Shown here piece by piece: positions 24,121-54,746 of a stretch of 64,000 nucleotides of DNA. The stretch covers positions 248,001 to 312,000 of the IMG/VR virus record IMGVR_UViG_3300024239_000011; one strand, given 5' to 3'. Position 1 is the stretch's first letter. Each line of letters begins with the position of its first letter. The position numbers and the translations under genes were made by a program. The notes below the pieces were generated by a model, which saw nothing but the letters and a program-made list of their open reading frames with translations, did no database searches and was not told the DNA's origin.

Positions 24121-24522
24121 ATGGTCCAGAAGGTTAAGCAATCAAACATCTTCATTGGTTTTAGCTCTGAGGGTGCAACCCCAGACAAGACCAAGTTGTT
24201 TGATATCGAACTGGTGAAGCGCGATCTGCTCAATCACTTGTACACTGCTCGCGGTGAGCGGGTGATGAACCCTGAATACGGGTCGATCATATGGGAATTG
24301 CTTTTTGAACCATTGACCGAAGGCACTGCGGCGATGATTGTGGATGACGTGACGCGGATTGTGAATTCAGAACGGCGCCTTCAGTTGCAAAATTGCGATA
24401 TCGAGCCGTTGGAACATGGCATCCGCATCAAGCTGGACTTGCTGTTCCTGCCATACGACATCGTGGACACAATGTTTGCTGATTTTGACAAAAGAAGTTA
24501 TGAGCGCAGAGGTGGTGTATAA
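24121..24522 (+). CDS. gp25: gp25-like baseplate wedge subunit
   Basis: LVKRDLLNHLYT..GERVM.PEYGS.IWELLFEP; TAAATA at 24085-24090. Confidence 0.92.
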   Translation: MVQKVKQSNIFIGFSSEGATPDKTKLFDIELVKRDLLNHLYTARGERVMNPEYGSIIWELLFEPLTEGTAAMIVDDVTRIVNSERRLQLQNCDIEPLEHGIRIKLDLLFLPYDIVDTMFADFDKRSYERRGGV

Positions 24523-27500
24523 TGAGTCAGGGTATTCGACAAAATAATCTCTTATCCGGTGAAGACTGGAAGAAAATCTATCGTGCATTCACCTCGGTAA
24601 ATTTCTCTGCATACGACTTCGACACCATCCGTCAGGCGATGGTTGATTACGTTCGCATCAACTTTCCCGAAGATTTCAACGACTGGATTGAATCGTCTGA
24701 GTTTGTTGCGCTCATTGATCTTCTTGCGTATCTTGGACAGAGCCTTGCGTTCCGTATGGACCTCAACGCCCGTGAGAACTTCATTGATACCGCCGAACGA
24801 CGTGAAAGCATTTTACGTTTGGCGCGTCTGCTCTCATACAATCCACGTCGCAATTTCCCGGCAACGGGGCTGGTGAAGATTACCCAGGTCATCACCGATG
24901 AAGATATTCTCGACAGTAATGGCGTCAACCTCGCAAACACGCCGATTCTTTGGGACGACGCAAATAACCCCGATTGGTTTGAGCAGTTCATTCTTGTGAT
25001 GAATGCTTCGTTCGTGAAAACCAACCCCTATGGTCGTCCGGTTAATAATGGAATTGTGGGGCAGGTTCGCACGCATCTGTATGAATTTAACAATCAGAAT
25101 ATGGCTCGCACGTCTTACGCATTTTCTGCAAATGCGGGTGGGAACACTTTGCCATTCGAAATTGTTAATCCGAATTTTGAAAATGGTGCCGCGTTTTATG
25201 AACGTAGCCCAAATCCCGAAGAAGCTTTCCATATCGTTTACCGAAACGATGGGAATGGAAATAGTAGTTCGAATACCGGGTTCTTTTTGATGTTTAAACA
25301 GGGACAATTAAAGTATGAGGACTTTGAGCTTACTGTCCCTGTTGAAAATCGTGTTATCGAGATTAATACTGATGGTATTAATGATAATGATGTGTGGGTA
25401 CAAGAAGTTGATGAACAGGGGCGTATCCTAAACGATTGGACCAAAGTACCGACGATTACTGGTAACAACATCATTTACAATAGTATTAACCGCAATGAGC
25501 GCGATATCTTTCAAGTCATAACTCGTGATCGCGATCAGATTAGCTTGCGTTTCGCAGATGGACGTTTTGGTAACGTTCCAACTGGTGTGATCCGGTGCTG
25601 GTACCGCCAGAGCAGCGGTACTGAATATGAATTGCGTCCCCAGGATATCAGCGGATTCATTCTTAATATCCCTTATGTGAATAATCGGGGCGAAGTTCAC
25701 AACCTCGGTCTGCAATACGCACTACAGTACACTGTCACCAATGCTCAACAGCGTGAAACGATTGAGCAAATACGTCTACGTGCGCCACAGGTCAATCAGA
25801 CTTATGGTCGCATGGTCAATGGTGAAGATTACAACGTCTATCCATTGAATACTAATCGCGCGATCAAGCTGAAGGCGGTCAACCGGACTTATGCCGGGCA
25901 CAACCGTTACTTCGATCTTAATGACCCGACCGGTAAGTATCAGAATACCAATGTCTTTGCCGAGGATGGTATCATCTACCGGGAGTTTGAGTACAAATAT
26001 GATGAAGAACCGTTGCCGACTTCCAAGGATGCCAGTGAGATTATCTATGACCGAATTATACCAATGGTACAGGCACCGGAGCTTGCGAATTTCTACTACT
26101 GGTACGTGACAACAAACGACACCATCCACCCGCATGTCGGGGATTTTCGGGTCGAGAACACCACTACGTTGATCTGGCGTCGTGCTGAAAAAGCGTTATA
26201 TTCTTCGACTGGTGTATTTGGTACCAGTTTGACCAATCCGGTACCGGTGGGTGGAACAACAATTGGTGCCAGTCATTACATCACTGCGGGGGCAATCGCG
26301 AAGTTCCGGGATGCTGGTTGGGCCAATATCAAAAGTGTGCGGGGCGATGGTACCTATGTCGGAAATGGTGCAAGTGCTAGTGGACCTGGGGCAATTGAAT
26401 TGGATCAGGCGGTGGCAACGGGTGATCCGTTAGAATTTATTATTCCGACTTTCCGCCGGGTATTCATTGATGCCGAACTTGAAAAAATACGTGAGCAAAT
26501 TCGGGAAACCAATACATTTGGTCTACGCTATGATGTGTATGATCGGGCGTGGAAGGTCATCACTGCACCAAATCTAAACGAAGAGGCGGTATACAGCACT
26601 GAGTTTGCTGGCGATACCAGCCTGACGAATAAAGATGCAAGCTGGATGATTAAAGCGGTTTATACTCCAAGCTCGTGGAAGTTCACGTGCCGTGGTTTGC
26701 AGTATGTTTTTGAGAGCGACAAGGATGTTCGCTTCTTCTACTTCAACGGCTATAAGACGGTGGATATTGCGACCGCTAAGGCGGTTAAGGACTATATCCG
26801 TATTCTTAAGGTTAACAACAAGCCACTCAACACTGAGCAGTTTGGTGAGGATATAAAGTTTGAATTGTATGATTCGTTTATGTACGAAGACGGTCATATT
26901 GAGCCGCGCCGAGTGAAGATTAAGCCGGTTGATAGTGATGATGATGGTAACCCGGACAATCCATTGGCGTTTGATGCCGTGGTATATCCTCACCGGTTTG
27001 AACAGCCATGGGATACGACCCAAATACCATCACCAAATGAAGATTCGGTATGGGACTATCTGGTGTTCTGGCGTCTATACACTGATAATGACGGCTATCA
27101 GTATTATAAGCCTATGGTCAAGGGTTCGGATATTCGTCGGTACGAAGACACCGCAAATGTAGATTGGCAGTATGGTGATGTTGGTTATAGCCCAATTACC
27201 AAAAAGTTCTATGAGTGCTTGGTTGAGGGTCAGAAGCCTACCACCCCGGCTGCCGCTGGTAAATATGTAGCCCATGAGGGTCGTGGTCTTGTGTCCGAGG
27301 CGGAAGATGCTGGATTGCTTTTCCAGTGGCGTCACTTCGCGGCATTCGATCACCGGATTGACCCGGCGCCGTCGAATATCATTGATATGTTCGTGTTGAC
27401 CCAGGAATACTACAACCGCGTCACTACTTGGATCAACAGCAACCGCCGCGCCGCTGAGTTCCCCAAGGCGCCGACCAGCGATGATCTGCGTCAGTTGTTC

Positions 27501-27932
27501 ACCGATTTGAACGCAGTAAAGATGCAGGGCGACGAAGTGATCTACCACCCGGTGACGTTCAAGCCGGTGTTCGGTGAGAGCGCCCGCGAGGAATTGCGGG
27601 TCAAGTTCAAGGCGATCAAACTCCCCACCGCCACGCTGTCGGATGGTGAGATCAAGAGCCAGATCATCCGCTCGATCAATGACTTCTTCGTGATTGAAAA
27701 TTGGGACTTCGGGGAAAGTTTCTACTTTACCGAACTGGCGACCTACATTCACCAGAACCTCATTACCGAAATTGCTTCGGTGGTACCAGTCCCGATGAAT
27801 GAGGACGCAAAATTTGGTAACTTGTTCCAAATCCGTTGCGAGCCTGACGAAGTGTTTATCTCGACTGCTACCGTGGCGGACGTGCAGATTGTCACGACCT
27901 ATACTCAGTCGAATCTTCGGATCGGTAACTGA
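24522..27932 (+). CDS. gp6: gp6-like baseplate wedge subunit
   Basis: YDFDTIRQ.MVDY, ARENFIDTAERRES, FADG.FG..P, RMVNGEDY. Confidence 0.9.
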   Translation: MSQGIRQNNLLSGEDWKKIYRAFTSVNFSAYDFDTIRQAMVDYVRINFPEDFNDWIESSEFVALIDLLAYLGQSLAFRMDLNARENFIDTAERRESILRLARLLSYNPRRNFPATGLVKITQVITDEDILDSNGVNLANTPILWDDANNPDWFEQFILVMNASFVKTNPYGRPVNNGIVGQVRTHLYEFNNQNMARTSYAFSANAGGNTLPFEIVNPNFENGAAFYERSPNPEEAFHIVYRNDGNGNSSSNTGFFLMFKQGQLKYEDFELTVPVENRVIEINTDGINDNDVWVQEVDEQGRILNDWTKVPTITGNNIIYNSINRNERDIFQVITRDRDQISLRFADGRFGNVPTGVIRCWYRQSSGTEYELRPQDISGFILNIPYVNNRGEVHNLGLQYALQYTVTNAQQRETIEQIRLRAPQVNQTYGRMVNGEDYNVYPLNTNRAIKLKAVNRTYAGHNRYFDLNDPTGKYQNTNVFAEDGIIYREFEYKYDEEPLPTSKDASEIIYDRIIPMVQAPELANFYYWYVTTNDTIHPHVGDFRVENTTTLIWRRAEKALYSSTGVFGTSLTNPVPVGGTTIGASHYITAGAIAKFRDAGWANIKSVRGDGTYVGNGASASGPGAIELDQAVATGDPLEFIIPTFRRVFIDAELEKIREQIRETNTFGLRYDVYDRAWKVITAPNLNEEAVYSTEFAGDTSLTNKDASWMIKAVYTPSSWKFTCRGLQYVFESDKDVRFFYFNGYKTVDIATAKAVKDYIRILKVNNKPLNTEQFGEDIKFELYDSFMYEDGHIEPRRVKIKPVDSDDDGNPDNPLAFDAVVYPHRFEQPWDTTQIPSPNEDSVWDYLVFWRLYTDNDGYQYYKPMVKGSDIRRYEDTANVDWQYGDVGYSPITKKFYECLVEGQKPTTPAAAGKYVAHEGRGLVSEAEDAGLLFQWRHFAAFDHRIDPAPSNIIDMFVLTQEYYNRVTTWINSNRRAAEFPKAPTSDDLRQLFTDLNAVKMQGDEVIYHPVTFKPVFGESAREELRVKFKAIKLPTATLSDGEIKSQIIRSINDFFVIENWDFGESFYFTELATYIHQNLITEIASVVPVPMNEDAKFGNLFQIRCEPDEVFISTATVADVQIVTTYTQSNLRIGN

Positions 27933-27960
27933 GGGGTCTAGCACCCCTCAGTTTCTCTTC
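27927..27960 (+). terminator. Intrinsic terminator after gp6
   Basis: AACTGAGGGGT-CTAGC-ACCCCTCAGTT followed by pyrimidines. Confidence 0.65.
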
Positions 27961-28083: not shown

Positions 28084-28479
28084 ATGGCAACCATCACTAA
28101 GACCGCAAAGCAGGCAGAAATCATCCGCACCGCTCTGGTCACCGACAAGCTCCCGACCGCTCTGCGCCCGTCCCTGAACAGCTACGCTACCACCCAGAAC
28201 TTCCCCCACAACGAAGACTTCGTGAAGACCATCGTTGCGCTCCGTCCGGAGTGGCTGCCGACCCGTTCGACCGAGATCAAGGGTTCGTTTGCGACCAACA
28301 AGAAGGCGCTGCTGCTGATGGCTGCTGCCGGTTGGAATAAGCCGCATGCCAAGACCAAGGTCGGCACCGCGCTGATCAACTATTGCTCGACCAAGCACAA
28401 GAACCATGACGCCGTGTTCGCCGCCACCATCAAGGCGCTGCGTCCGGATTGGTTCGGTGGCGAGCGCGTGCTGCCTTAA
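28084..28479 (+). CDS. Hypothetical protein with internal two-fold repeat
   Basis: KTIVALRPEWL and ATIKALRPDWF; GAGG RBS; strongly biased codons. Confidence 0.75.
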   Translation: MATITKTAKQAEIIRTALVTDKLPTALRPSLNSYATTQNFPHNEDFVKTIVALRPEWLPTRSTEIKGSFATNKKALLLMAAAGWNKPHAKTKVGTALINYCSTKHKNHDAVFAATIKALRPDWFGGERVLP

Positions 28480-28757
28480 TCTGTGATCTGGCTTTGGGCA
28501 CTTGTTTTGTGATAAGTGTCCAAAGTCAAGTTTTGGCCCGACGAATCATTTGAGGTATTTGATGCTTAGAGTTGTACTTGTTCGCCAGAAAATGAGTGAC
28601 ATTCGGGCGCGTGATTTCGAAGAGAAGTATATCGACGCCCCGTTGCCGACCACTCGTGCCGACTATGATGCGCTTCGGAAGAAGCTGTCGGAAGCTGGTG
28701 ATCTTCTTGGCAGCAACGCATGCATGATCATCAGCGTCACGGAAGTGGAGGCTGATG

Positions 28758-29162
28758 ATGCCTAAGATGACACGCCGTGGTTTCTTTGCTGGGTTGGTGG
28801 CGCTGGTCGCCAGTACGGCTCTTCCGAAGATTGCCACCGCCAATCCGACAAAGACCGAGGCGCTTGATCGGATACATACTCGCCGCGCGCTCATGACGAT
28901 CCAACAAGACATCGAGAAGGTGATGCGCGAGTTTGTTTTCGAACGAAATGACGCTGCCACGCGCGTCGCAGTTCGGAACAACCTGATCTCGATGCTCGAA
29001 CGCTATATTCCCTACGATTACAGCGTTGTGTGCGACCCGACCAATAATACGGACGCTCGTATTGAGCGCGGTGAATTGTGGGTGGATATCGTGCTGAAAT
29101 TCGATCCCACCGACCGAGATTACATCTATATCCCCGCCCGTCTGGTCGGAATGAAGGTCTGA
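28758..29162 (+). CDS. Twin-arginine signal fused to a tail-sheath (gp18) C-terminal domain
   Basis: MTRRGFFAGLVALVA; ALDRI..RR, FVFE.ND..TR, YDY.VVCD.TNNT..RI.R.EL.VDI, YIYIP. Confidence 0.8.
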   Translation: MPKMTRRGFFAGLVALVASTALPKIATANPTKTEALDRIHTRRALMTIQQDIEKVMREFVFERNDAATRVAVRNNLISMLERYIPYDYSVVCDPTNNTDARIERGELWVDIVLKFDPTDRDYIYIPARLVGMKV

Positions 29163-29163
29163 T

Positions 29164-30123
29164 ATGAGACAGAAAGTCGTCATGATGGTGGGGTTCCCCG
29201 CCGCAGGGAAGGGCACCCTCACCCGTGAATTATCCGACGAAGGCTATGTGGTGTTGAACCGCGATAGCGTCGGTGGATCGATTGCGGGTCTGGTTCCGAA
29301 GCTGGAAGACCTTCTGGCGGCTGGCAAGTCTGTGGTGCTGGACAACACCAACGGGACCGTCGAAACCCGCAAGCAGTTCATCGACGTGTGCAAGAACCGT
29401 GGCGTTGCCATTGAGGCGTTCCACGTCGATACGTCGATTGAAGATGCCCAGATCAACGCTCTGCATCGCATGTGGGACCGTTACCGGATGATCTTCTACA
29501 CCGATGCCGATATCAAGGCGCATCCGGACGCGAAGAAAGACCCCAATATCTTCCCGGTGCATGTGCTGTTCTCGTATCGCAAGCAGTTCGAGAAGCCCAC
29601 TACCGCCGAAGGTTTCACTGCGGTCAAGAAGATCAATTTCGAACGCCGTCCGCTGGGGTCAGAATACCATAATTCTGCGGTGATCTTCGACTACGACGAC
29701 ACCTTGCGCACAGTGGCTCCCGGTGCTGCTTACAAGTACCCGACCAAGCCCGAAGAAGTGACCATTCTCCCTGGTCGTGCTGAGAAACTTCAGGCACTCG
29801 CCAATCAGGGCGTGATCCTGCTTGGGGTGTCCAATCAGTCGGGCATTGCCAAGGGTCATTTGTCGGTTGAAGACGCCGACCGGTGCTTCCGCCACACTAA
29901 TGAGCAGCTTGGGGTGAATGTTGACTATAAGTTTTGTCGTCATGCGGTACCGCCGGTTAGTTGCTATTGTCGCAAGCCAGGGCAAGGTATCGCAATAGAA
30001 CTAATACGCCGTTACTATCTTGATCCAGCGAAGGTGCTGTTTGTTGGTGATCAAACTACTGATAGGACATTTGCGATGCGGGCGGGATTTGCCTATTCGG
30101 ACCAAGCCGATTATTTCGCTTAG
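29164..30123 (+). CDS. Polynucleotide 5'-kinase/3'-phosphatase-like (P-loop plus HAD)
   Basis: GFPAAGKGT, VLDNTN...R; DYDDT, SNQSG, CYCRKP, VGD...D. Confidence 0.85.
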   Translation: MRQKVVMMVGFPAAGKGTLTRELSDEGYVVLNRDSVGGSIAGLVPKLEDLLAAGKSVVLDNTNGTVETRKQFIDVCKNRGVAIEAFHVDTSIEDAQINALHRMWDRYRMIFYTDADIKAHPDAKKDPNIFPVHVLFSYRKQFEKPTTAEGFTAVKKINFERRPLGSEYHNSAVIFDYDDTLRTVAPGAAYKYPTKPEEVTILPGRAEKLQALANQGVILLGVSNQSGIAKGHLSVEDADRCFRHTNEQLGVNVDYKFCRHAVPPVSCYCRKPGQGIAIELIRRYYLDPAKVLFVGDQTTDRTFAMRAGFAYSDQADYFA

Positions 30124-30241: not shown

Positions 30242-30472
30242 ATGAAAGATTTTGTTGAATTGGTGAGAACCGGACAAACCGAAGCAGCCTACCGACGTTT
30301 ACAATACGTTTTGCGGTCCAAGATTACCGAGCAACTAAAAATGGCACCGGATGAAGCGAATGCTTTCGTCGCGCGGGCGTATACCGTTCCCATGCCTCCG
30401 GAGCGGAGCATGACGCTTGAAGAAGCCTTTAAAGAATGCCGGTTAGCATTTATGCAAATTATGTCGGTATGA
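30242..30472 (+). CDS. Hypothetical protein, paralog A
   Basis: Similar to the next ORF (G...A...LQYV.R......QLKM.P.....FV.R). Confidence 0.65.
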   Translation: MKDFVELVRTGQTEAAYRRLQYVLRSKITEQLKMAPDEANAFVARAYTVPMPPERSMTLEEAFKECRLAFMQIMSV

Positions 30473-30492: not shown

Positions 30493-30729
30493 ATGAGAAC
30501 ATACCTTCATTTAATGGGTCAGGGAAAAGCTCGTGAAGCATTTTTGCATTTGCAATATGTCACCCGGTACGAGCTTGCAACACAACTAAAGATGTCACCA
30601 ACATCACGTGATGACTTTGTTCAACGAAGCGATCCATATAAAGTATTGTCAGTGAATAATGCTCTGCAATATTATCATATGGCAACCGAGGCATTGAAAA
30701 ATGGAATCGAAGGAGATTGCTCCCTATGA
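30493..30729 (+). CDS. Hypothetical protein, paralog B
   Basis: GAGG RBS; similar to the previous ORF. Confidence 0.65.
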   Translation: MRTYLHLMGQGKAREAFLHLQYVTRYELATQLKMSPTSRDDFVQRSDPYKVLSVNNALQYYHMATEALKNGIEGDCSL

Positions 30730-38665: not shown

Positions 38666-41600
38666 TTAGTTACCCCAGTAATGGGTGGCTGGTTTTTCCC
38701 GTAGGAATTGTGCCATCGCACTGTTGGAGTATTGCAGCCCGCGATACGAGCGGAGGTGCAGAATAATGTTGTTCTGCCCGTTCGTCGGCGCCGGGATGTT
38801 CCGGCGGAACTTCAGGATGGTTCCGTCGATGAACCAATCCTGATACCGTATCAACTGTTCTTCAATCGTTCGCGTTTCACCGGTTTCAGGATCAACAAAT
38901 CCTTCGTGTTCGATAATAACGCGAATATCTAGAAGCTCAGCATCATATGCGCGTGACAATTGATACCAACGCCCAGCATCAGCCTGGGTCACGCCTTTCG
39001 TCCCAACTGGGATGGCATCTAGCTGTCCTTGGAAGCCCTTATCCAACAATCCTTCCCAGCGATACCCACCGGGAATATATTGCGGTGCCCCACCATCGAC
39101 AACAATTGTTCCAGCCGGGTAAGACGCACCGGAAATTTCCCAGTTCGAGACGGTGGCAGAGAAGGTCAGTACCCATCCTTCAGTTGGGGCATATGGGAAT
39201 TTCACTACAACTTCATCCGTGTCATTGCGAGTAACGGTGTAGCTTTCCTTCCGATACTCTTTCACCATCACCTTGCCGTGATCAACATACTCTGCCTTGA
39301 TCATTACGGCATCGTCATTCATGGGGTCGAACCAACCAGGGAGAATAAATTCTTCCTTTAGCCCATCAGATACTTCCATATGATTTCGATAAATGTTGCG
39401 AATACCAGATGATGTTCCGCCAGTACCACGACGAATATTCAACAGACGGTTATTCACCACGTCGATGCCCATGTATTCGATTCGTTCACCATCTACAAAT
39501 ACGGCTTCTGGGGTCAGTAGCGGACGTACCGACGAAACAACGTTATTCCCAAAGAATGCAGTTGCTAATGCATCAGATGCACTGTCACTGATTGAGAAAT
39601 CTTGTCCGTCTACCCGACGTATGATCAAATGCCCATGTTCGGTAATCGCTGCTGAAATCGTAACTGCACGAAGATCGGCGTTCGAGTTGATTGCCATTGC
39701 GATGTCCGCGTGAGTGATGATCCCATCCGCAGCACCACCAGCGGCATTGTCGCTGACAACCACGTGTACTGGTGGAACTGGTGTTGATGACAGTAGATCA
39801 ATGTTGACCACCAACGTTGCAGTGGTTGCATACATTGTCACGTCTTTTCGTGACAGAATAGCAGCTTCATTATTAGTCACGAACACTTTTGCATCAACAA
39901 CCTGCATATGACGATCATCAAAATCCAATGCAGTATTCAGCTTGGTCTTGTGGGCATCAGCAATGCGTAGGTATTCCCATTCGTCCTGGCTGTTCTTGAA
40001 TAATCGGAAACCAACCGGCTGTTGCGCGGAGCGATTGGTAAACGTCGTTACAACCACACGCCAATCCCCACTATGCCGATTGTTGAAGCTCACGAGCGGG
40101 CGGCTTCGGTTATCATCCCATCCAAAATACGCATCCCAACTGAGATTATCCCAGCCGATGGTGCTGTTTTGAATGGTGTAATCCATGCCGTAGATATTAC
40201 GGCGCCCGTTTGTGTTGACCCACAACGAATTTGCATCGCTGGGGACACGGGTCAGTGGATATTTTCCATTTACAGTCGCGGTGAAGACCTCAGTCCGAAT
40301 ACCCATCGCTTCATCGTCACTAAATGTGGTGACAGTAATCCAGTCACCATCTTCCAACGTCAGCCCTGCAAACGTTGGACCATAGAGATGCAATTCGTTT
40401 CCGTTCTTGATGTCGTAGTCATACTTGCCATGTTCATACCAAACAAAGCAAATATCGGCATTCTTGCTGGGTGCATCAAAGAAGTGAATCTCGCGGGTAG
40501 CTTCTTCAACCGCACGAGCCAATGATGCTGCGTAGTTTCCGGTATTACGCATTCCGGCGCTGGTAATCATACGACTCCAACGACCGCGCCCCAAATAGAG
40601 GATCATATCCCCATCTTCGAACCCGAACTCGTTCTGATTGGTTTGATTTGGGTTAGGACGATTCATCCCTTTCGTTGCCCACGTACCAGCAAACGCCACT
40701 CCCAGCCAATTACGAACATTGGTGCCTTCTGGTTTTGGGGTGTTATCAAATGGCACGCCATCATAACCACCATCGTCAAACCCGAAATACCCTTCTATAA
40801 CAAAGTAATCACCCGCTTTTAGATCGTCATCACCATCACATGGTAACGCATCATTAGCATCGATTGGCCCTCGGAAACGCTGCGGAATGGTAAAACTGCC
40901 CACATCCACCGTTCCCGTCGCATCACCACCGACTGTTCCTGCGGGATACACGGGGACAAGTGGAGTCGTATTCTGCCCAATCCAGATTTGGGTGTCAGCA
41001 ACCGAGGTAATTGGACGTTCGAAGCGGTATGCAAAGCAACCGCCGTCACCCAGGAAGTACCGAGTTGTTGGTGGCATCAGACGAATACCACGACCAACGT
41101 CATCCGCTACCAACGGATCGCCAATTGACGTTCCGGCTGGTTGACCGTTCTCACAGATCAAATCAGCTTCGGTGATCTTTTTATAAACCAATACAGCCCC
41201 ATGGTGCGGTACCGTTGGGGACGGGACATCAGTCAGAATAATCGGCTCACCGGCAGTATATTGATACTGATGAGTACGAACTTTGACAATGTTCGGGGTG
41301 TTGAATGCGACGATAGCAACCTCTCCCGGTTCACCATCAGTCAGAACAACTTCATGAGTACCGGTATCATGTTTGATCACGGAATAATCACCGAGGGACA
41401 ACACTTCGCCGTCACGAACAACCGATATATGTGACTGAGAATAGGTAATCCCTTCTGGATTTTTCAGCATCAATGGCGGCATGATGCCATTAGTCGGGCT
41501 AAACCGAGCGATTTCCACAATGCGCTGGTTCTGATTGTTTTGGAAGTCATTCGATGCCGCATCCTCGATCTCGTATGTCACCGTCACGAGGGTTCCTTCA

Positions 41601-44600
41601 GTGGGGGCAACCCCAAGGAACAATTGCTGTTCGATAACATTAAATTCGGTGATCTCAGTGACCGGTTGAGTGCCAGCTTGTGTCCAAACGCGAATATTTG
41701 GAGTTGCTGCCGGAAGTTTGGTCAATGTAAATTCACCCACGCCAACCGACACAAACGTATCGATGTTTTCCACATTGGTACCACCAGTAGAGAATGATGT
41801 GATCTTGATGACCGCACCCTTCGGCGGGGCAATACCCAATTCAACTACACCAGTGTCCCAGTGCAAGTAATACTGATCAGCACGTACCGCAGTATCGCTG
41901 CTAAACAATGGATCACCGGTCATTGGGTTGCGCGAAACCATTTCAAGCATCATGTTCTCGCCGTCCAGCCCGACCGTGACAAATACCGTTTCGCGGCTTG
42001 ATGGCTTTTGTCGCAGTTCAAAGTGCGTCGTAACATCATCAGCTTCGTAACGCGCCGATACAACAGACGGCGCACCAGCGGTGGCTTCGGTGTATACGGT
42101 GATGCCTAGGCTATCCGCCGTCCGCGTTGCTATCAGTTCTTGTGGACGATTTTCATCCATATAAGGGTTGGTCATGGCAGGTTTGCCCTGTAATTCGATG
42201 CGGACTTCCGTACCTTGCACAACACTTTCATCGAAAATGACATGCCATGTGCCAGCTATATTTTCGAGATGATAACCATCTAGTCTACGGCGTCCGTTGA
42301 CATACACACGTGCATGCCAATTTAGGTCATCCGCACTACCGATAACGCCTACAACAGGCGCCCCATCAAGTTGGAAATCTTGTTGCCCGTCGAGGGCTTC
42401 AAAGGTTTTGGACGGACCCGCCAGGAAGAAACCACCATCAACAATTACATCATCAAACCCGCTGGTAGAAGCCGGGGCAGTAAACGTGCCTCCCATTATG
42501 TTCATATCGTAGTAACGAGTTGATTTCTTCTCGCTCATGGTTGTTTCTACACCATCTACAATATCATTGGTGACAACCGCAACCGTGATTAGATCACCGT
42601 GATTAGGAAGTGCGTTGAACCTTACTTTCCACAGGTCTTCTGTTGTATTGTAATAGAAATCATATGCATCGGAAAGTTGAACTATGCCGTTGTATTCAAC
42701 AACCACTACATCGCCGTCCATCTTGTCGCGAATGCTATCGAAGATATGGTCGCCCCATCCAAGGGAGTTGTCCATTCCATCCTGCCAATATGTGACAGGG
42801 ACTTCATCTTGACCGTTGTACACGAAATTCATCACTGGAACATGGTTGCCCACATCTTCAGAGAACTTGGTGTCCAACAGATCGCCACCATCCATGCGGG
42901 TACCCTTGAAGTTGATATCCAAGAGTTCTCGCATATCTTTCGCAGGCATACCAGGGGTTGGGCGATAGTAAAGCATGATGCGCTCAGCCTGGGTCAACAA
43001 ATTCGGGTCCATGGTATTGTCGTATGGAACCGTAATATTGTCTCCTTTCTCATTAACCAGGGTCAACACATCATCCCGGTACGTGAGTAGGTTCATCGGT
43101 ATGTTGTCACTACCAAAGATAATGTCACTTGGAAGTGACGCTTTGATTTCGATAGTGTTGGCATCAACATACTTCATAACCTTATATGCGCCCACCATGG
43201 TCGTTTGCGAACGACGACGAATGTAAATGGTCTGTCCATCCTTAGGCGTTTCATTAATACGCAGACGTACCCCTGGATCGGTCTTATAGGTGATCATTAG
43301 TTGATCACCGGATTTTGGTGTTGGACTGATCATCACAATTTGCCCATTACCATACATAAACGTGTACAAAGGATCGGCATTTGTTACACGCGGCGTTCCG
43401 TTGCGCGGAATAATCGCGTCAGGTGTAATCAACTCCCAATTAGATTGATCGGTTGCAAAATCCACGCTGGTATGCGAGGTGGTACACACAAAAACTGATC
43501 CGCTGTGTTTAGCCAAATCATTGACCACATACACCTTTTCCGCTGCCCATGCCTTAACTCCACGTAAATTGCGCTTTACTTTTACGCTAATAGTGGATTC
43601 GTGATATGGTATGTTTTTAAGTGCAATTGTACCGGTGCTTGTCCCACGAATAACGATATCTTCGCGTTGTTCCATCGAGACAATTTCATAGTCAGGTGTG
43701 TAGGTTTTTGCATCATTATCTCGTGAGATTTCTAACGCATCACCATCGGTGTAATAATTTGCCGTTGTTGCCCAATCAAGTAGACGACCATCCACGTAGA
43801 CTTCGAGATCATGTTCATCTACCCGGAACGGCAATTCAAACAGCTTCGTGTGTCCATCACCAGTCAGCACTACTTCTGGAATTGGCTGGGGGATAACCAC
43901 ATAAGCGGCAATCTGGGGGATTGCATCGCTCCAATGTTTTAGTTTTTCGCCGTCAAAATCACCAGTGGAAACATACGATTTGATGCACAAGTAGTTCTTT
44001 GTGCGCCAACGGATAATATCCCCAACCACATACGAAATATTAGCGTCATATGCAGACGGATTCATATCATAATGCGGTGCCACCACATTGTGGTTGGCTG
44101 GGGTTTTAACAATGACTCGGTTGGATGCCCCAGGTTTTAGGCTGGCAATGCGTGTTGGAATTGGGTGGTTGGGTGAACGCAAATACACAACTTTCCAATG
44201 ATCTTGGTTTAGACCATCGTAGTTATGGAACCACACACGATCACCAAGACGATGCGCACGCTTGGTGGTCGATTCCTCACGTTGACCATAGTGTTCACGG
44301 TACAACTTCAACAGAGCTTGCTCACCATCCACGTACCAATCAATCCATTTTACACGGTCAAAGTGAATCGTAGTCTTCATCGAGCGTACCGGATAATGGT
44401 CGTCCGCGATTTTCTGGAAGTTTTCGTACCAATCCTTGTGATGTCGGCTGTTACGAAAATCCGTGGCCGTATATGGATCAGCAATAGTGTACGTACCATC
44501 CCCATTCCATACCACGTCGATTACTGCGTGATCCTTAATGGTACGATCCAATGGGAATACTGGCTTATCAAAGTCGGTAACACGGGCATGACCGGTTTCC

Positions 44601-47600
44601 ATCGGGAGAATCTTCGACAATGTAAAATCGCGGATTTTCGAGTGGTACGGCTTGACTTCGTTGATGTATCCAATAATTGAGTCGGTCTTGTCTTTACGCA
44701 ACACCGGTTCTTGAATCAACGGCTCGTTGATACCCTTGATGAACAGAAACGATGTTTTGAATGCCCAATCGACCATCCGGTGTTCGGTATGAGCGTAATG
44801 TACCATAGCAAAGAACAGGGCATTGATTTCACCCTTGGACAGTAACCCTGGTATATCAGCATCACCCATCAATGCTTTCAGCATAGCCTTGAACTCAAGG
44901 CTACCATCACGGAGGCGGACAGTCTCCCAATATGCGTTCAAATCAGTTGGATGATTGTCCTTAATGATTTGGCGCCGACTTTCGTCGTAGAACCGATCAC
45001 TCAGCTTAATAGTACCATTCTTGTAGGCTACCATTTTCCAACGACCGAAGGCTTCACCATCAACCTTGCCCTGGTATTCCTGCCAGTACCAGAGGTCAAT
45101 GTCCTTTTTGTCAATCCGGATCAGATCGCCTGCTGAGAAACCAACCTCACGGTCGTGGATATCGCGTTCAACTTCACTTGGGAATACATAACGCGGGATG
45201 TTCAGCTTCGAATAACCAGTATCATACCAGTCAACGGTAGACCAGAAATCAATAGTTTTATAATGCTGAACTGCATCGCAAGACCAACGACCGGCAACGG
45301 TCGGATCGTAACTCCACAGAGACCAGAAGCCATAGGTTGAAGTATTACCACGAACCAGAACTCGGGTACCACGTTCTAGAACGAAGTCAGGGTCGATTTC
45401 CTTGGCATTGCGTTCGTCAAATGAGTCAACTTCCATGTGGTAGTCTAAATCACCAACTACCTCAAACCAATTGTTGTTGTCCACGCCAACCACTGCGTTC
45501 GAAACACACTGTATCCACTTGGTGCCACGATTGTCATTACCACGACGAACATAGATATTAGCCCCTTCCGGTAGGTGGCTACCGGCGGCACAATCAGTGG
45601 CGCGAACGAATACCTTGTCGTTTTCGTGGTAAACGTAGATGCCGTTCTCCGTGGCATCTATCTGGTTCTTCACCAGTACGCGGTTGCCCTCCCGGACAAA
45701 CACACGGTCGATGGTACCAGGGAATGTACCGCCAGTTAAATCAACGTTGCCGTCAATCGTCGCGGTGGCCAAATCGACATCAATCTTCGCAAGCAGACCT
45801 ATACTTGAACCAACATGCTTCTGCGCTACTAATGCCCGTGGAGATTTTTCAGTGAACGTCAGCAAACCTTCATCGGACGATTGAAGATACGTAAGATCAC
45901 CTTGCATGACCGGGCGCTTGGTCAGCATGGTATTCACTCGCTCTACAATGATGCGACGTGCCATGTAGCGGTCATTGAACCATGACTGGCGCGGACGGAA
46001 GAGGTTGCCATAACGTTCCACCGTGGACAGGCTCAGGTCGGGAACGTCCATGTATTCGACGTTGAAGCCAACCAACGAGTCGGTCATCTTTCGCCACAAT
46101 AATGGATCGGGGTATGACCGGTCATCACCTTCGCGCATCAACACCCATTCACGGTGAACGTTGTCTTCGCGGTCGGTACGACGATAGTTAACCTGAACAA
46201 TACTGTTCTCATCGTTGAGCAGATAATCAACACCTGAAATGATTGTCGCATCTGGTGAGATTGGTGCGAACCATGGCATATCAAATGTCGATGGGTTCTC
46301 AATGAACTTAGCAACCTGAGTGGTCGTCAATTTGCGCCATTCAACCGGGGGAACTGTTGCCTTGTTTTTGACCCAGAAATAGTATACGGTTTTATAATCA
46401 CCGGTAGCCGGATCATATTCGGTGCGCTCACACCATGCCGGGTTGTTGGCATCCTTTACTGATCCAGTTGGTTTGGCGTCAAATGCTTCGATTGCCTTAC
46501 CCTTGTTGATTTCGACTTGACGTGCCCATTCGGTGGGAGGAACCGTTGAACGGGTCCACTCGTACACATCAATCGTGGCACGGGGCGCCAAACGACCCCA
46601 CACGTACTTGCGATACTTGTTATCACTAATCTCGTAGTCGAGGAACTTGACGGTACTCAAATCCCACCACAGGCGATGTTCTTCTCCACCACCCCAGGCA
46701 ATTTCCGGATTCATACGATGGTATTTGGGGTCGCCATTATTGTATACTGCCGGATCAATTTCCAGTTTGTACCAAATTTCTGCATCAGCCGTGCCCGGTA
46801 TGATGCCCTTGGCAGGATCATACAGGTGAACGTACTGCTGTACCTCAGTGGTTTTCTTGTCATAGATTACCGCATTGAAAATACGATTGTTATCTACTTT
46901 TGCTGGTTGGATACGAACCGGTATGGTATCGAAATTATTACCGTTGTATTGATATACTGCATACTTACCATTACCCGCATCATCTACATAGGCAAGGTCA
47001 CCTGACAACCACTGCCCGGTATTCAGCGTTGCATTGCGTGCAGATATGGTTGCAAAACGGCGTGGGAAGAATTTCATCACGGCAGGACCAGTGGTTCCGC
47101 CCTGCGAAGTCCAATCAAACATGTCGTCAATTACCACCGGAATGATGAATTCCGTAGTAGATGGTACTGACTTCACATAATGAATACCACGTACATCCGG
47201 TATCGACTTGGTATCTGTAGTGATTACGATCAAGTCGTCAATAGCAAGATTATGGGTGTCCGAAACTGTGATTTTAGTTTCAGTATCCGACACATATTCG
47301 ACCTTGGTAACATTAACAACAGCCGTACCGAGGTTCTGAACAGAGAACATCTGCCATTCGTCATTGATGTCGTATACCCAAATTTTTTCACCCGTCACAA
47401 AGTTCTTACCCTTCTGAAGGATTTCGTAGTGAACACTGGACAAGTCGGTAAGATCAAGGGCATAATGATCAGATTCATCCACACGGGCATAACCAGCAAC
47501 CGGAAGATCACCCTCACGGGTTTCATTGATTGCGCGTAGCGGGAAAATGGTTTCCATTTCCCGGTTTGGTTTCACCACCCACCGGTTCTCGGTTTCTACC

Positions 47601-50600
47601 AACCGTCCAGCGTCAATGTCTTCCACGATAGTTGAAGCACTGGTGTGTGCGGACAACACCGAGTAATACCGGTTGTCGAATTTAACCTCTTCATATTTTG
47701 AATAGAAGGTATTCGGTGCCCATGACTGAACTTCAAGTGGAATATTGACTACATCATCGTTCGGCAGATCAGCAATGGTACTGTTGTTGGCGAAAAACTC
47801 AACCAACTGCGGACGTGACCGTACTTCTCGTTGACGCAACAAGAATTCAAAGGTCAATTTATTGGTAACGCCACCATAGTTTCCGACGCGGAATGCCCAT
47901 TCATCAAAGAATTTAACTTCTTCCGCGTCCAGCACAAAGAAACTACGCAAGAGTTTTTGCATAGCATCAGAGGTGCCTTTCTGACGCATGGCACCCTGGA
48001 AGAACTGGAACTCGGTCTTAGGATCAAGCAACAGATCATTCATATAAGCGCGACCCTGGTAGCCCACTAAGTGCAGCGAGTAATTACGCAGGGTTGGATT
48101 ATCTACCCCATCTTCAATACCAAAGAAATGACGGAAGTCATCCACGGTCTTTTCGAAGTTTGGGATCAAAACATTGTCGGTCACAATAAAACCGGGGGCA
48201 TCCATGCGCCCAACCCAATCCATTGACCGCGTTGCCGACAGACGGAGACGTGGCTGACGCAGGTTGAATACCGGATCATAGATCAGATCATTGAAAATTG
48301 TCACGTTGTCGAAAATGATAACGTGTTCAACTTCACTGACAAACAAACGGGTCAGATAAATCAATTGGTCGTTACGTGACGTGACCACCAATTCATTACC
48401 GACGCGCGAGACATCGGTTTCGCGCGGTTGTATCATAAAGCCATCGCGATTAAGCATCGAATATGCACCACGCACAATGCGTTCGATATTCTGTACTTCG
48501 CCATGGTCGGTGACGAATTTGACATATTTTGATGCCGGTGACAGTGCAATAGTATTACCCGGTGCCCAACGTCCGAGAGACCAGAACAAAAAGTCCTTGC
48601 CAACCGAGACCCAATCAATCGTCTCTTCGTTGGCAAAATCCATTTGTTCGAAAACCCATCCGTCTTTCTTCAGCCAGCGTCCATAATCCACAAGGAAGTC
48701 AAAAACATCTTGTGGATTGTAAAATTCAGTACCATACGGTACATTAAGAATGTTTCCGGCACGGTTTGCATCAAGATAATGAATTACCGTGATGCCTTTA
48801 TTATTCGGACCAAGATCAAGTGGTTTCCAGAAGGAATCCCCAAACTCTTCACCGGAACGATGGTTGTCAATGCACTTGTATTCAACTCCCTGATTAACAA
48901 CGATATCCCCTGCCGTGTACACAACATGAGCTTGCCATGGACGACCAGTTTTTTCGGTCTTACCAACGGCAACCTTGGTCTTGCGACCATTGATATCACT
49001 TGGAATGGTGCGGAATACTGGATCAACCACATCGTAACCAAACACCTTCCATCCTCGACCGGTCCACTGCACGATTACGCCGCTATAGGTGTGATCGGCA
49101 ATGCTCGGGCTGCGATATAGGAAGACGTTGATGTTTTCGCTCGGGACCAAACCGAAGTTATCGGCACGAGCCTGTAAGGTGTTCTGATCCACAAACCCCG
49201 CCATTTTGTGACCAAGACGCACGTCAATACCACGAATGACCTTACCGAACGCCTCGGTAATATCCTGACCACGGCTTTTGATGTAATCACAAACCCATTG
49301 TTGTACCCCGGTCACGCGATAACGCTGCGGAAGATCAACCTCAGAGGATTCTTCGCCATGCAAGGTCAAATAGCTGTGCGGACGACGGGCACGAATATCA
49401 TCGTACACCCACTGACGGGTTTGCTTCTGGTTGCGATAAATTTCCTTCAGGCGGACGGTATCCCAACAGTATTCGATCAGTCGCACCGGCTTGATCAAAT
49501 ATCCGCTCATGGTAGCAGCGAACGGGAAGTTCGGGCTGCGGCGCCATGCGGTTTCTGTCGGTCCATGATCCCCGAATTTCCATTCCTGCTGTGCTTCAAA
49601 CGCAGTCGGAAGGCGCGAACAAATACCAGCAGATACCGGATCAATCAAATTACCAAGATCATCTACCGGAATGTACTGCGACATTCCGGGACGCTGGTAC
49701 TCTGAATAGGTACCAGCGGTCGGTCCACGAGCGATAATGCCGTTTTCAAGATCGCCCCACAACTTGGTATTGCCGCGCGTATATGGAGCCACGCCGTAAT
49801 GGGCATCCCACCAATCCGGCTTTTGTGACATACCAAGCATTTCCCATGGGTGTGTATGGGGGCGGTCGGTATCAAAATAGTACAAATAGATGCCACGCCA
49901 ATGCCCTGGCAACGGCTGCCCGTCACGATCAGGAACCGCTCCGTAATTCCATGTGAATGGATTGTCGGCAATCCACGTCTGGTTTTCACGATAATTGACG
50001 CGAGACATCGTTGCCCACCGTTCAAAGGCAGGACGGATAATGCTGTTCCATTCAGCCCATGAATAATCGGTCAAATAGCCTGCACCACCCTCACTCGCGG
50101 GGCGCCGGAATTTACCAGATACGTACCGACGATGGTCGAAAATCCGTTCAGCCCCTCGTTGGGCAAAACGCAGCGACGAATTGTTGTAAACGCGCTTCTC
50201 AAATTCGAGTACAACGCTGTTCAGGAACTCATATTCCCCGGTGAAGCTTTCGATATACGAACCATCATGTGCCTGAATAAACTGACGTGGGTTCAGCAGC
50301 GTCTCATCCACTACCATCCCAGGACGGAAAATAGCATAGATGCCCATTTGAGAGGGCGACGGTGGCACGTAGGTGAAATACCCATCATACCGGATCAGAC
50401 GAATTTTATCGGTTTCATTGAGGCTGAAATCGCCAAGCAGACGTATTTCGTCTACGTCAGTCTCGTAGTCCCACCCACGATCCAATAATTTCGGAAATTC
50501 GCCGTTCTTTTCCAAATAGACGAATGATTTTTCGATGTTCTCGCGGGTGCCTGGAATCAGATATTCGTTGACACCGGTAAAGCAGTCCACCGAAACTTCG

Positions 50601-53980: not shown

Positions 53981-54463
53981 ATGTCCAGAACTGTTCGTAA
54001 GGTTCCCAATTGGGTGTCCAATCGCCACTGCAACAAGCATTTGGATAAGCCGTGTGCGGTTAGCTCTCATGGCTCCCCGCGCAAGTTCGATACCGACCGC
54101 GACATGTTCATCTTCGAATATACGCATGGGCTGTCGAAGCCGATGAACCTGTTCGCGGGTGACGGGGTTTTGGTTGGTCGCAAGGGCGCCAAGGCGGTCA
54201 AGAAGGCGTATTCCAAGAAGGCGCGTCGTCAGAGCATGGCGGTTCTCGAAGCCGAATTGCTGATGGCGATGGAACCCATCGATCCGATCTTCGACCCCGA
54301 GGATGATTACTTCCCGTCGTATGACGACGATCTGGACCTCGATCCGTTCGATGAGCATTATGCGGCGAACGACGATTGGGATTACGTCGATGACGGGATG
54401 GATTTCTGCGATCCCTGGTACGACGATTACCACTCCCACTATTACCCCATGGCTGCGGAGTAA
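53981..54463 (+). CDS. Hypothetical protein, basic N-terminus and Asp/aromatic-rich tail
   Basis: GGAGG RBS; composition. Confidence 0.75.
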   Translation: MSRTVRKVPNWVSNRHCNKHLDKPCAVSSHGSPRKFDTDRDMFIFEYTHGLSKPMNLFAGDGVLVGRKGAKAVKKAYSKKARRQSMAVLEAELLMAMEPIDPIFDPEDDYFPSYDDDLDLDPFDEHYAANDDWDYVDDGMDFCDPWYDDYHSHYYPMAAE

Positions 54464-54468
54464 CCACC

Positions 54469-54648: not shown

Positions 54649-54650
54649 GG

Positions 54651-54683
54651 GAAAGGCGGGAGAAATCCCGCCTTTTCTTTTTC
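54651..54683 (+). terminator. Intrinsic terminator
   Basis: AAAGGCGGGA-GAAA-TCCCGCCTTT followed by a T-tract. Confidence 0.8.
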
Positions 54684-54746
54684 TATCACTTGACTTTTAG
54701 TACGGTGAATGTCAAAAATCCATAAGCGTTCACCGGAGTTTTCGCC

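What the first reader, a model, noticed from the sequence alone, without database searches (positions are those of the whole stretch)
28758..29162. Tat signal peptide fused to a tail-sheath C-terminal domain
Seen: TRRGFF followed by a hydrophobic stretch, then ~100 aa matching the gp18 sheath C-terminal domain. It sits in an accessory cluster with no TAAATA nearby. Known: (S/T)RRxFL-type motifs direct Tat export; this sheath domain mediates polymerisation and tube contact. Inference: an exported or membrane-anchored sheath fragment could intercept incoming tail tubes or T6SS/CIS needles (superinfection exclusion) or decoy a sheath sensor. Together with the gp23 mini-genes it suggests a general strategy of repurposing virion fragments.
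Basis: partly seen in the sequence, partly recalled or inferred. Interest (0 to 1): 0.78.

Follow-up and report, generated by a model that had tools for sequence, protein, structure and literature searches.

The report
Tat-exported mini tail-sheath domain protein
A giant T4-like phage carries a small non-structural gene that joins a twin-arginine export signal to the core domain of the tail sheath; the same fusion recurs in at least 13 other uncultured phage sequences, so it is a real, undescribed protein family, probably sent to the host periplasm, whose function is untested.

Summary
Window 28758-29162 (+) encodes 134 aa. Residues 1-28 look like a class-I Tat signal: T-R-R-G-F-F, a 16-residue mildly hydrophobic stretch, then K and A-T-A|N. 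Residues about 31-134 are a tail-sheath C-terminal domain (Pfam PF17482 above its cut-off; AF2 pLDDT above 93; best fold matches T4 gp18).

It is not chance. Fourteen short proteins, 31-59% identical, share the architecture, and the two arginines are invariant. These genes sit among early or replication genes of T4-like contigs, not in tail modules.

Here a terminator-like hairpin separates the gene from the gp25-gp6 baseplate genes. It lacks the TAAATA motif and abuts the stop and start codons of its neighbours, including a polynucleotide kinase.

Between two near-identical strains the flanking genes have dS 0-0.19 and this ORF has dS 1.44, with gene-exact borders. Both alleles co-occur in the same samples, and the signal peptide is the most conserved part.

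The most likely role is an exported accessory protein in a phage conflict, perhaps Spackle-like superinfection exclusion. That function is inferred only. The sheath's first helix and C-terminal arm are poorly conserved in the family, and the complex prediction gave no answer.

The parts
28758..29162 (+). Mini-sheath gene: 134 codons plus stop. An alternative ATG lies at 28755.
   Evidence: The database protein P0001 starts at 28758, and homologue P0002 starts at the same M-P-K.
28747..28751 (+). Shine-Dalgarno-like GGAGG, 6 nt before the ATG at 28758. It lies inside the 3' end of the upstream ORF.
   Evidence: Read directly from the sequence.
28758..28841 (+). Predicted class-I Tat signal peptide, residues 1-28. 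It has an n-region with K3, R6-R7 (28773-28778), an h-region at residues 8-23, K24, and A-T-A before the predicted cleavage site at N29.
   Evidence: feature table; RR invariant in the family; Pfam TAT_signal matches 4 of 13 members, best E 5.7e-4; omega 0.06 in this part. Export and cleavage are predicted, not shown.
28842..29159 (+). Mature part, about 106 aa: a standalone tail-sheath C-terminal ('handshake') domain with two long helices, a short helix and three strands, including the equivalent of the sheath's last strand.
27927..27953 (+). Terminator-like hairpin (11-bp stem, 6 GC pairs, T-rich tail) at the stop of the gp6-like baseplate gene. It separates the late baseplate unit from the cluster holding the mini-sheath gene.
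28084..28479 (+). First ORF of the cluster: 131 aa, no family match, GC3 0.80.
   Evidence: It is conserved at 97.7% in the related strain.
28562..28765 (+). Small upstream ORF of 57-67 aa depending on the start, with no family match. Its stop overlaps the start of the mini-sheath gene.
29164..30123 (+). Polynucleotide kinase / 3'-phosphatase (319 aa). It starts 2 nt after the mini-sheath stop codon, so the two are probably co-transcribed.
   Evidence: PF13671, PF08645, phrog_505.
24121..27932 (+). Context only: gp25-like sheath initiator (24121-24522) and gp6-like baseplate wedge protein (24522-27932), preceded by TAAATA at 24085.

Best explanation
This is a functional accessory (non-virion) gene of a giant T4-like myophage. 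It belongs to a so far undescribed family in which a cleavable twin-arginine (class I Tat) signal peptide is fused to the standalone C-terminal core domain of the tail sheath.

Proposed course:
1. The gene is transcribed with early or middle genes (the 131-aa ORF, a small ORF, this gene, then polynucleotide kinase), not with the late baseplate genes.
2. The small domain folds in the cytoplasm.
3. The host TatBC receptor recognises it through T-R-R-G-F-F plus the mildly hydrophobic h-region, and it is moved folded across the inner membrane.
4. Signal peptidase I releases it after A-T-A.
5. In the periplasm the roughly 106-aa sheath-derived module acts as a binding protein in a phage-phage (or phage-host) conflict. 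The most likely target is a tube-fold or hub component of a contractile tail that has just penetrated, which would make it a Spackle-like superinfection exclusion or sensing function. Divergent alleles would give different specificities.

Shown: the gene, the domain, the signal-like architecture and its family-wide conservation, purifying selection, the allele polymorphism, and the setting outside the late genes.

Inferred: Tat-dependent export and cleavage (my estimate about 0.8), periplasmic action in a conflict (about 0.5), and a tail component of superinfecting phages as the target (about 0.3).
For: Gene and domain.

Family:
- Fourteen short proteins (125-178 aa) at 31-59% identity all carry [TSNK]-R-R-x-[FLV]-[FLIM] at residues 3-9, a 15-29-residue uncharged stretch (mean hydropathy 1.3-2.2) and small-x-small sites at about residues 24-31.
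- Pfam TAT_signal matches 4 of 13 members, best E 5.7e-4.
- These features match the published definition of class I Tat signals (PMC13673990).
- By a crude rule of my own, this is the only N-terminal Tat-like protein in the 543-kb genome. The phage has no TatA or TatC of its own.

Not structural:
- A terminator-like hairpin follows gp6 and no TAAATA lies nearby.
- Family members sit beside UvsW, a Metallophos-family protein, NUDIX, terminase, PTPS or thioredoxin genes on the same strand, often with overlapping stop and start codons.
- The phage's own sheath gene is about 100 kb away and only 41% identical.

Conflict-like evolution:
- Against a sister strain the flanking proteins are 92-99% identical (dS 0-0.19). 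This ORF is 58.5% identical (dS 1.44, omega 0.22), and the divergent block coincides with the ORF.
- The signal is 22/24 identical despite about 21% DNA change (omega 0.06).
- Both alleles co-occur in the same metagenome runs.
- Domain branches are 5-15 times longer than those of full-length sheaths.

Precedent: T4 Spackle is an early, signal-bearing, periplasmic protein that binds a tail part of superinfecting phage (PMC7677548).

Weak hint of expression: a wastewater metatranscriptome holds an identical 206-nt piece of the gene.
Against: - No export assay exists, and no SignalP or TatP was available.
- The window protein scores below the Pfam TAT_signal cut-off (12.3 against 22.7 bits), and NCBIfam returned no family for it at E up to 10.
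- Sequence alone cannot separate Tat from Sec routing (PMC13673990).
- Of 58 columns at least 80% conserved in full-length sheaths, only 19 are kept in the Tat minis. The first helix and the C-terminal arm are the relaxed parts, so sheath-like contacts with tube or sheath are not conserved as such.
- The complex prediction with four copies of the phage's tube protein gave no answer.
- Signal-less standalone minis also exist and intermix with Tat minis in an unresolved tree. The domain may therefore have a compartment-independent role.
- No conserved neighbour points to a partner.
- The host is unknown.
Confidence: 0.4

Rival explanations
1. The protein is exported, but its target is not an incoming tail. 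The periplasmic domain may act on a host envelope component. Alternatively it may serve as a Tat 'hitchhiker' carrier that takes a signal-less phage partner across the membrane, bound by beta-strand addition to its sheet.
For: The signal evidence is the same as for the best explanation. The sheath domain naturally accepts strands from other proteins such as gp15 and neighbouring sheath arms (PMC12929629, PMC9700779). Tat is the route for pre-folded complexes (hitchhiker example: PMC4273604). The stop of a small upstream ORF overlaps the start of this gene, and that arrangement is kept in the sister strain. The sheath-specific contact residues are relaxed.
Against: No neighbour is conserved across the family. 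No partner was identified. The allele polymorphism is easier to explain by a variable phage target than by a host housekeeping target.
Confidence: 0.22
2. The protein acts on the cytoplasmic side. The N-terminus would be only a membrane tether, or would not function. The domain would cap, nucleate or poison sheath polymerisation (of its own phage, a competitor's, or a host tailocin or T6SS), or would decoy a cytoplasmic defence sensor of sheath protein.
For: The domain keeps the fold core and the last strand of the sheath. Many standalone minis lack any signal. The gene lies close to gp25 and gp6 in this phage. gp25 has the same fold and nucleates the sheath.
Against: The RR pair is invariant, n/h/c regions are conserved and AxA-like sites are present in all 14 members. 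The signal is the most constrained part of the gene. A positive n-region followed by one hydrophobic segment would place the domain outside the cytoplasm. The handshake-arm residues are relaxed.
Confidence: 0.15
3. The signal peptide works, but through Sec rather than Tat. The twin arginine would then be just the positive n-region.
For: Most Tat signals can drive Sec export of Sec-compatible passengers (PMC13673990). The window protein scores below the curated Tat HMM cut-off.
Against: Exactly two consecutive arginines are invariant across 14 divergent members, followed by F, L or V and then F, L, I or M. Hydropathy is low (1.3-2.2), and several members have a basic residue in the c-region. 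The passenger is a compact domain predicted to fold on its own.
Confidence: 0.12
4. It is a minor virion or baseplate protein, or a decaying fragment of a duplicated sheath gene with a fortuitous RR motif.
For: It lies about 830 bp downstream of gp25-gp6 on the same strand. The homology is to a structural protein.
Against: The intervening terminator-like hairpin, the absence of the TAAATA motif, and family members outside tail modules. Omega is 0.22 and the frame is intact in two alleles that are 35% diverged in DNA. The family-wide signal is conserved. Identity to the phage's own sheath is only 41%.
Confidence: 0.04

Closest known systems
T4 Spackle (gp61.3), periplasmic superinfection-exclusion protein
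   Same: A small phage protein from an early gene cluster, made with a cleavable localisation signal. It acts in the periplasm of the infected cell on a tail component (gp5 lysozyme) of superinfecting phages (PMC7677548). This is the closest functional analogue to what is proposed here.
   Different: The fold is unrelated: Spackle is a helical bundle with a disulfide. It is not derived from a virion protein, and no twin-arginine motif is reported for it. Its target is known, and its homologues are highly conserved. Here the target is unknown and the alleles are very divergent.
Tail sheath protein (T4 gp18 / PF17482 Phage_sheath_1C), C-terminal domain
   Same: There is sequence homology above the Pfam cut-off. 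The fold is the same and the invariant core motifs are kept: F-E-x-N-D-x-x-T-R, V-V-C-D-x-x-N-N-T and L-x-x-D.
   Different: Only about 105 of 650-1500 residues are present. The N-terminal arm and the outer domains are missing, and an export signal stands in their place. The first helix and the C-terminal arm are relaxed, and evolution is 5-15 times faster. The gene is outside the tail module.
Class I Tat substrates of bacteria (cleavable RR signal peptides)
   Same: A positive n-region, an RR motif at the n/h border followed by F/L residues, a mildly hydrophobic h-region and an AxA-type c-region (PMC13673990).
   Different: The passenger is a cofactor-less fragment of a viral structural protein encoded by a lytic-type phage. 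I found no report of such a fusion. Tat dependence is untested.
gp25 / TssE sheath initiators, and small DUF7355 proteins of T4-like phages
   Same: These are standalone proteins of about 100-130 aa with the sheath-core-like fold.
   Different: The window protein has no sequence membership in either: it gave no PF04965 or DUF7355 hit. gp25 is a baseplate part without a signal, and this phage has its own gp25 at 24121-24522.
Signal-less standalone sheath C-domain proteins in metagenomic phages (for example P0069, P0042, P0089, P0121)
   Same: They have the same domain, similar size, fast evolution, and positions among replication genes.
   Different: They have no signal peptide. Their relationship to the Tat-bearing set is unresolved.

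Membership tests
Class I Tat substrate | N-terminal signal with a positively charged n-region and a twin-arginine motif at the n/h border (consensus S/T-R-R-x-F-L-K) | tested here: met
   M-P-K-M-T-R-R-G-F-F, with R6 and R7 invariant in the 13 aligned homologues; P0152 also has T-R-R. Definition taken from PMC13673990.
Class I Tat substrate | A mildly hydrophobic h-region followed by a c-region with an AxA-type signal peptidase I site | tested here: met
   Residues 8-23 are uncharged with mean hydropathy 1.79, followed by K24 and A-T-A|N at 26-28|29. All 14 members have comparable candidate sites. These are rule-based checks only; no SignalP or TatP was available.
Class I Tat substrate | Score above the curated signal models (Pfam PF10518; the NCBIfam library) | tested here: not met
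   The window protein scores 12.3 bits against a cut-off of 22.7. The NCBIfam scan returned no family for it at E up to 10. In the family, 4 of 13 members match PF10518 at E up to 10, best 5.7e-4.
Class I Tat substrate | Export that depends on TatABC and on the RR pair, with cleavage of the signal | not testable with these tools
   This needs fractionation in tat+ and tat- cells and an RR-to-KK variant.
Tail sheath C-terminal domain (PF17482) | Sequence match above the Pfam gathering score, and the sheath-core fold | tested here: met
   30.3 bits against 26.9; 12 of 13 family members match. The best Foldseek hits are gp18 and other sheaths.
Functional tail sheath subunit | Full-length protein with an N-terminal arm plus C-terminal arm, conserved tube-facing helix, and a gene in the tail module | tested here: not met
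   Only the C-domain is present and the N-terminus is a signal peptide. Of 58 sheath-conserved columns 19 are kept. The real sheath is a 1061-aa open frame elsewhere in the genome.
Spackle-type periplasmic superinfection exclusion | Early expression and periplasmic location | tested here: inconclusive
   The setting is outside the late genes: terminator-like hairpin, no TAAATA, stop and start abutting those of neighbouring non-structural genes. Location is predicted only, and no expression time course exists.
Spackle-type periplasmic superinfection exclusion | Binds and blocks a tail component of superinfecting phage; homology to Spackle | tested here: inconclusive
   The complex prediction with the tube protein gave no answer. 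The fold is sheath-like, not the helical bundle described for Spackle (PMC7677548), so this is at most an analogue, not a member.
gp25 / TssE sheath initiator | Match to PF04965 and a place in the baseplate gene set | tested here: not met
   There is no PF04965 hit at E up to 10. The phage's gp25 is a separate gene at 24121-24522. Only the fold is alike (TM about 0.5).

The most novel reading that the evidence does not exclude
A family of phage 'tail mimics' is exported by Tat. A folded piece of the sheath core is placed in the periplasm of the infected cell, where it captures the bare tube or hub of superinfecting contractile-tailed phages (or tailocins). It would either block genome delivery or report superinfection to the lysis clock. 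Co-existing, anciently diverged alleles would set which competitors are recognised. This would be the first exclusion system built from a recycled virion part, and the first Tat substrate I know of in a lytic-type phage with such a role.
Probability: 0.25. Interest if true: 0.85.

Novelty: new variant of a known kind. Interest (0 to 1): 0.68.

Why it matters
If the prediction holds, phages reuse a piece of their own injection machine as a secreted tool. They would also rely on the host's folded-protein export pathway to place it outside the cytoplasm, away from their own assembling tails.

It would add a new class to the few known periplasmic exclusion factors (T4 Spackle and Imm). The pattern of two old alleles in an otherwise nearly identical genome, co-occurring in one community, would become a natural experiment in phage-phage specificity.

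It also gives a simple, testable marker for annotating similar genes in T4-like and jumbo phage metagenomes: an RR signal plus PF17482 in a protein of about 130 aa.

Tried and rejected
- **Close DNA relatives.** Megablast of the region against GenBank phages found nothing.
- **Cultured phages.** tblastn of five family members against 50,697 phage records gave only full-length sheath genes in the listed rows. No cultured phage with the fusion was found. A few records have a second matching place that I could not list.
- **IMG/VR scans.** They failed for the alignment, found no relative for the window protein or P0004, and returned 22 partial matches for P0009 (query residues 34-137, no signal part) that I did not examine further.
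- **ESM Atlas.** No usable result.
- **Complex prediction.** Mature domain plus four copies of the tail tube protein: 'no answer'. This counts neither for nor against binding.
- **Selection test on the sister-strain contigs.** L005, L006 and L007 are identical across the gene because of a shared mosaic block, so they were uninformative.
- **Diversity-generating retroelement as the cause of the divergence.** Rejected: substitutions are of all types and include synonymous sites along the whole ORF.
- **Recent duplication of the phage's own sheath.** Rejected: identity is 41% and the two are not sisters in the tree.
- **Lipoprotein signal.** Rejected: there is no conserved lipobox cysteine.
- **Single origin of the Tat set.** Neither shown nor rejected. 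The AU test gives p = 0.29, and the tree with signal-less minis is unresolved.
- **Conserved neighbouring partner.** None found.
- **Phage-encoded TatA or TatC.** None.

Full report
**What is there**

Window 28758-29162 (+) is an intact ORF of 134 codons; a second ATG lies one codon upstream at 28755. GGAGG sits at 28747-28751.

The stop codon of a small upstream ORF overlaps the start of this gene. The next gene, a polynucleotide kinase/3'-phosphatase (PF13671, PF08645, phrog_505), begins 2 nt after its stop codon.

The N-terminus reads M-P-K-M-T-R-R-G-F-F. A 16-residue uncharged stretch follows (mean Kyte-Doolittle 1.79), then K24 and A-T-A|N.

The rest of the protein matches the tail-sheath C-terminal domain:
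- Pfam PF17482 scores 30.3 bits against a cut-off of 26.9.
- phrog_10581 'tail sheath' gives E 2e-21, aligned to the last 108 positions of that profile.
- T4 gp18 residues 545-625 match at E 5e-6.

An AlphaFold2 model built on 50 aligned sequences leaves residues 1-31 disordered. It folds residues 32-134 into helix-helix-strand-helix-strand-strand, with 10-residue block means of pLDDT 93-98 from residue 41 to 130. Its best PDB matches are T4 gp18, a Klebsiella phage sheath, sheaths of contractile injection systems and the sheath initiator gp25.

**The genome**

The window is bases 248001-312000 of a 543-kb IMG/VR virus record with 48.7% GC.

By its gp6-like baseplate protein, the nearest cultured relatives are Agrobacterium phage Atu_ph07 and Sinorhizobium phage Phosso, at only about 42% identity. 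Next come the PA5oct and Rak2-type jumbo phages, all of Gram-negative hosts.

The phage's real sheath is a 1061-aa open frame about 100 kb away, only 41% identical to the mini-protein over residues 27-131. The tube gene is elsewhere again. The phage has no TatA or TatC, so any Tat export would use the host's machinery. By a crude motif rule of my own, this is the only protein in the genome with an N-terminal Tat-like signal.

**More than chance: a family**

An exhaustive profile-free search of 1.84 billion representative proteins found 1022 matches. Most are C-termini of long sheath proteins.

Among the best 150 are eleven short proteins (125-178 aa) whose alignment reaches the query's N-terminus. 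Each starts with a twin-arginine signal-like sequence. With P0002 (58% identical), P0152 and the window protein, the family has 14 members.

In a 13-sequence alignment at 31-59% identity, R6 and R7 are invariant, together with core sheath residues. All 14 members share these features:
- RR at residues 3-9, followed by F, L or V and then F, L, I or M.
- A 15-29-residue uncharged stretch of low hydropathy (1.3-2.2).
- Small-x-small candidate cleavage sites near residues 24-31.

This is the published architecture of class I Tat signals (PMC13673990).

The curated HMMs are less clear. Pfam TAT_signal gives 12.3 bits here against a cut-off of 22.7, and matches 4 of 13 members (best E 5.7e-4). The NCBIfam scan returned no family for the window protein. 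Sequence cannot by itself separate Tat from Sec routing (PMC13673990).

**Setting**

The gp25-like and gp6-like baseplate genes lie just upstream at 24121-27932. TAAATA at 24085 precedes them, and an 11-bp-stem terminator-like hairpin at 27927-27953 ends them.

TAAATA sits a few to about 40 nt upstream of many ORF starts in the window, so it is a plausible late promoter element. None occurs between 27266 and 34462, which covers the cluster holding this gene.

In other contigs the family members lie beside UvsW and a Metallophos-family gene, or beside NUDIX, terminase, PTPS or thioredoxin genes. They are on the same strand as those neighbours, often with overlapping stop and start codons, and never in a recognisable tail module. 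No neighbour is conserved across the family.

This is the pattern of an accessory early or middle gene. As a weak hint of expression, a wastewater metatranscriptome holds 44% of the gene's sampled words and a 206-nt contig identical to 28913-29118. DNA carry-over cannot be excluded.

**Evolution**

Three metagenome contigs carry a sister strain with the same gene order. Compared with the window, protein identities and synonymous divergence (dS) are:

| Gene | Protein identity | dS |
|---|---|---|
| Flanking genes (131-aa ORF, small ORF, kinase, 76-aa ORF, 78-aa ORF) | 97.7, 92.2, 99.4, 97.4, 98.7% | 0-0.19 |
| Mini-sheath gene | 58.5% | 1.44 |

Mismatches rise from 1-3 per 30 nt to 5-17 per 30 nt from the start codon onward, and fall back right after the stop codon. 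The substitutions are of all kinds: 140 of 402 aligned bases differ, with no adenine bias. This argues against a diversity-generating retroelement.

So two old alleles sit in an otherwise young backbone, which points to an allele swap with gene-exact borders.

Within the gene the signal part is the most constrained. It is 22 of 24 residues identical with omega 0.06, although 15 of the first 72 bases differ. The mature part has omega 0.25.

Reads-as-contigs from two runs of the source study show both alleles in the same samples. The window allele has depth 5 and 16. A second contig at depth 48 in one of the runs carries the sister strain's changes at 28766-28781, and then becomes too divergent to lay across 28814-29147.

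In a tree of the domain, the Tat proteins have end branches of 1.3-4.1 changes per site for most members, against a median of 0.27, and the phage's own sheath is not the window protein's sister. A single origin of the Tat set is not rejected (AU p = 0.29) but also not shown. When signal-less standalone minis are added, the tree is unresolved and the two kinds intermix.

**What the domain keeps and loses**

In T4 this domain (gp18 residues 548-631) forms a shared sheet with the terminator gp15 and touches gp3 through a helix (PMC12929629). In phiKp24 a helix of the domain carries the patch that binds the tube, and the N- and C-terminal extensions plug into neighbouring C-domains (PMC9700779).

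Of 58 alignment columns at least 80% conserved in 27 full-length sheaths, the Tat minis keep 19. All 19 are core motifs: F-E-x-N-D-x-x-T-R, D-x-x-V-V-C-D-x-x-N-N-T, I-x-x-x-x-L-x-x-D and one proline.

The first helix and the C-terminal arm are relaxed. I did not map which of the domain's two helices makes the tube or gp3 contact, so the link between the relaxed helix and that contact is my inference.

The fold is therefore preserved, but the polymer contacts are not conserved as such. This fits a module that has taken on new and variable binding partners. It weakens the simple idea that the protein binds tubes exactly as the sheath does.

A complex prediction of the mature domain with four copies of the phage's tube protein returned 'no answer' and is not evidence either way.

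**Interpretation**

The best-supported reading is a real accessory gene encoding a Tat-type exported (or at least envelope-targeted) sheath-core domain. It acts outside the cytoplasm, away from the phage's own assembling tails, in some phage-phage or phage-host conflict.

The closest functional precedent is T4 Spackle. It is an early, signal-bearing periplasmic protein that binds the tail lysozyme of superinfecting phages (PMC7677548). By analogy, and because of the domain's origin, I favour exclusion or sensing of incoming contractile tails.

My estimates: about 0.8 that the signal is functional, about 0.5 for a periplasmic conflict role, and about 0.3 for a tail component as the target.

Rivals:
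- A different periplasmic target, or a Tat hitchhiker role.
- A role on the cytoplasmic side in sheath assembly or as a sensor decoy. Signal-less minis exist.
- Sec rather than Tat routing.
- A structural protein or a gene remnant. This last reading is contradicted by the setting, the selection pattern and the family.

**Novelty**

Full-text searches found no paper linking a Tat signal to a sheath fragment or to phage exclusion. A 2026 review of Tat substrates does not use the word 'bacteriophage' and cites 'phage-encoded' only in one unrelated reference. In tblastn searches with five family members, the listed rows for GenBank phages were all full-length sheath genes.

Small standalone proteins with this fold do exist in phages: gp25, DUF7355 and the signal-less minis. 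What is new is the conserved export signal and the allele pattern, not the mere existence of a mini-domain.

That search finds matches only outside this window.

Noticed in passing
L042 (ENA contig ERZ27245855:k141_178484, range 508421-514825): The same gene cluster, with an identical protein, lies on an 869,618-bp contig, while the IMG/VR record is 543,035 bp. The genome may be much larger than the record, or the long contig may be a concatemer or misassembly.
   Followed up: no
window 38666-53632 (-): A single open reading frame of 4988 aa, with TAAATA at 53664 and 53691 just upstream of its start.
   Followed up: no
window 24085, 34463, 61087 (+); 20799, 22457, 53664, 59769 (-): TAAATA lies about 6-40 nt upstream of many ORF starts, for example 24085 before gp25 at 24121. 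Yet the motif is not over-represented in the window overall (16 found, 23.5 expected). It is a candidate late-promoter element, and none lies between 27266 and 34462.
   Followed up: partly
window 30242-30472 and 30493-30729 (+): Two adjacent small genes (76 and 78 aa) are paralogues (29% identity, E 4e-9) with very different GC3 (0.48 and 0.32). No family match.
   Followed up: no
L011:3302-3553 (+): Directly upstream of the Tat-mini P0005, and overlapping its start, is an 83-aa ORF that itself contains the sheath motif (V-V-C-D-E-T-N-N... N-E-L-H-V-D-V). This is a second, even smaller sheath fragment in tandem.
   Followed up: no
P0069 (L044:5729-6085), P0042, P0062, P0089, P0095, P0121, P0127, P0142, P0143: Standalone sheath C-domain proteins of 99-128 aa without any signal peptide. 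P0069 lies among clamp-loader, dCMP deaminase and Cpn10-like genes. They evolve fast and intermix with the Tat-bearing set in an unresolved tree.
   Followed up: partly
G000:C1:~54250-54798 (L043:1381-1932) and neighbours: The tail tube gene (phrog_4542, E 2e-60) lies about 120 kb from the sheath gene. It is flanked by a homing-endonuclease-like ORF and by a second, much longer tube-like ORF of more than 474 aa.
   Followed up: no
L005 vs L006 (whole loci): Two variants of the sister strain are a mosaic of identical blocks and blocks with more than 10% divergence (for example 69 and 68 mismatches per 100 nt near the end of the kinase gene). This shows frequent recombination in the region.
   Followed up: partly
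window 28084-28479 (+): The 131-aa ORF that opens the cluster has GC 0.60 and GC3 0.80 against a genome GC of 0.487. The whole block from this ORF to the kinase gene is GC-rich, which suggests foreign origin.
   Followed up: no
whole genome G000, Pfam PF07068: Gp23-family matches lie at C1:206039-207019 (the major capsid protein) and, weakly, at C1:337097-337366.
   Followed up: partly
BFVD hits to model m15a11cfc9fa2: Several small viral proteins of 73-148 aa share the fold. They include DUF7355 proteins of Yersinia phage fHe-Yen9-01 and Erwinia phage Cronus, and an unnamed 148-aa entry (A0A7S5RC61, TM 0.71). I could not check whether any has a signal peptide.
   Followed up: no
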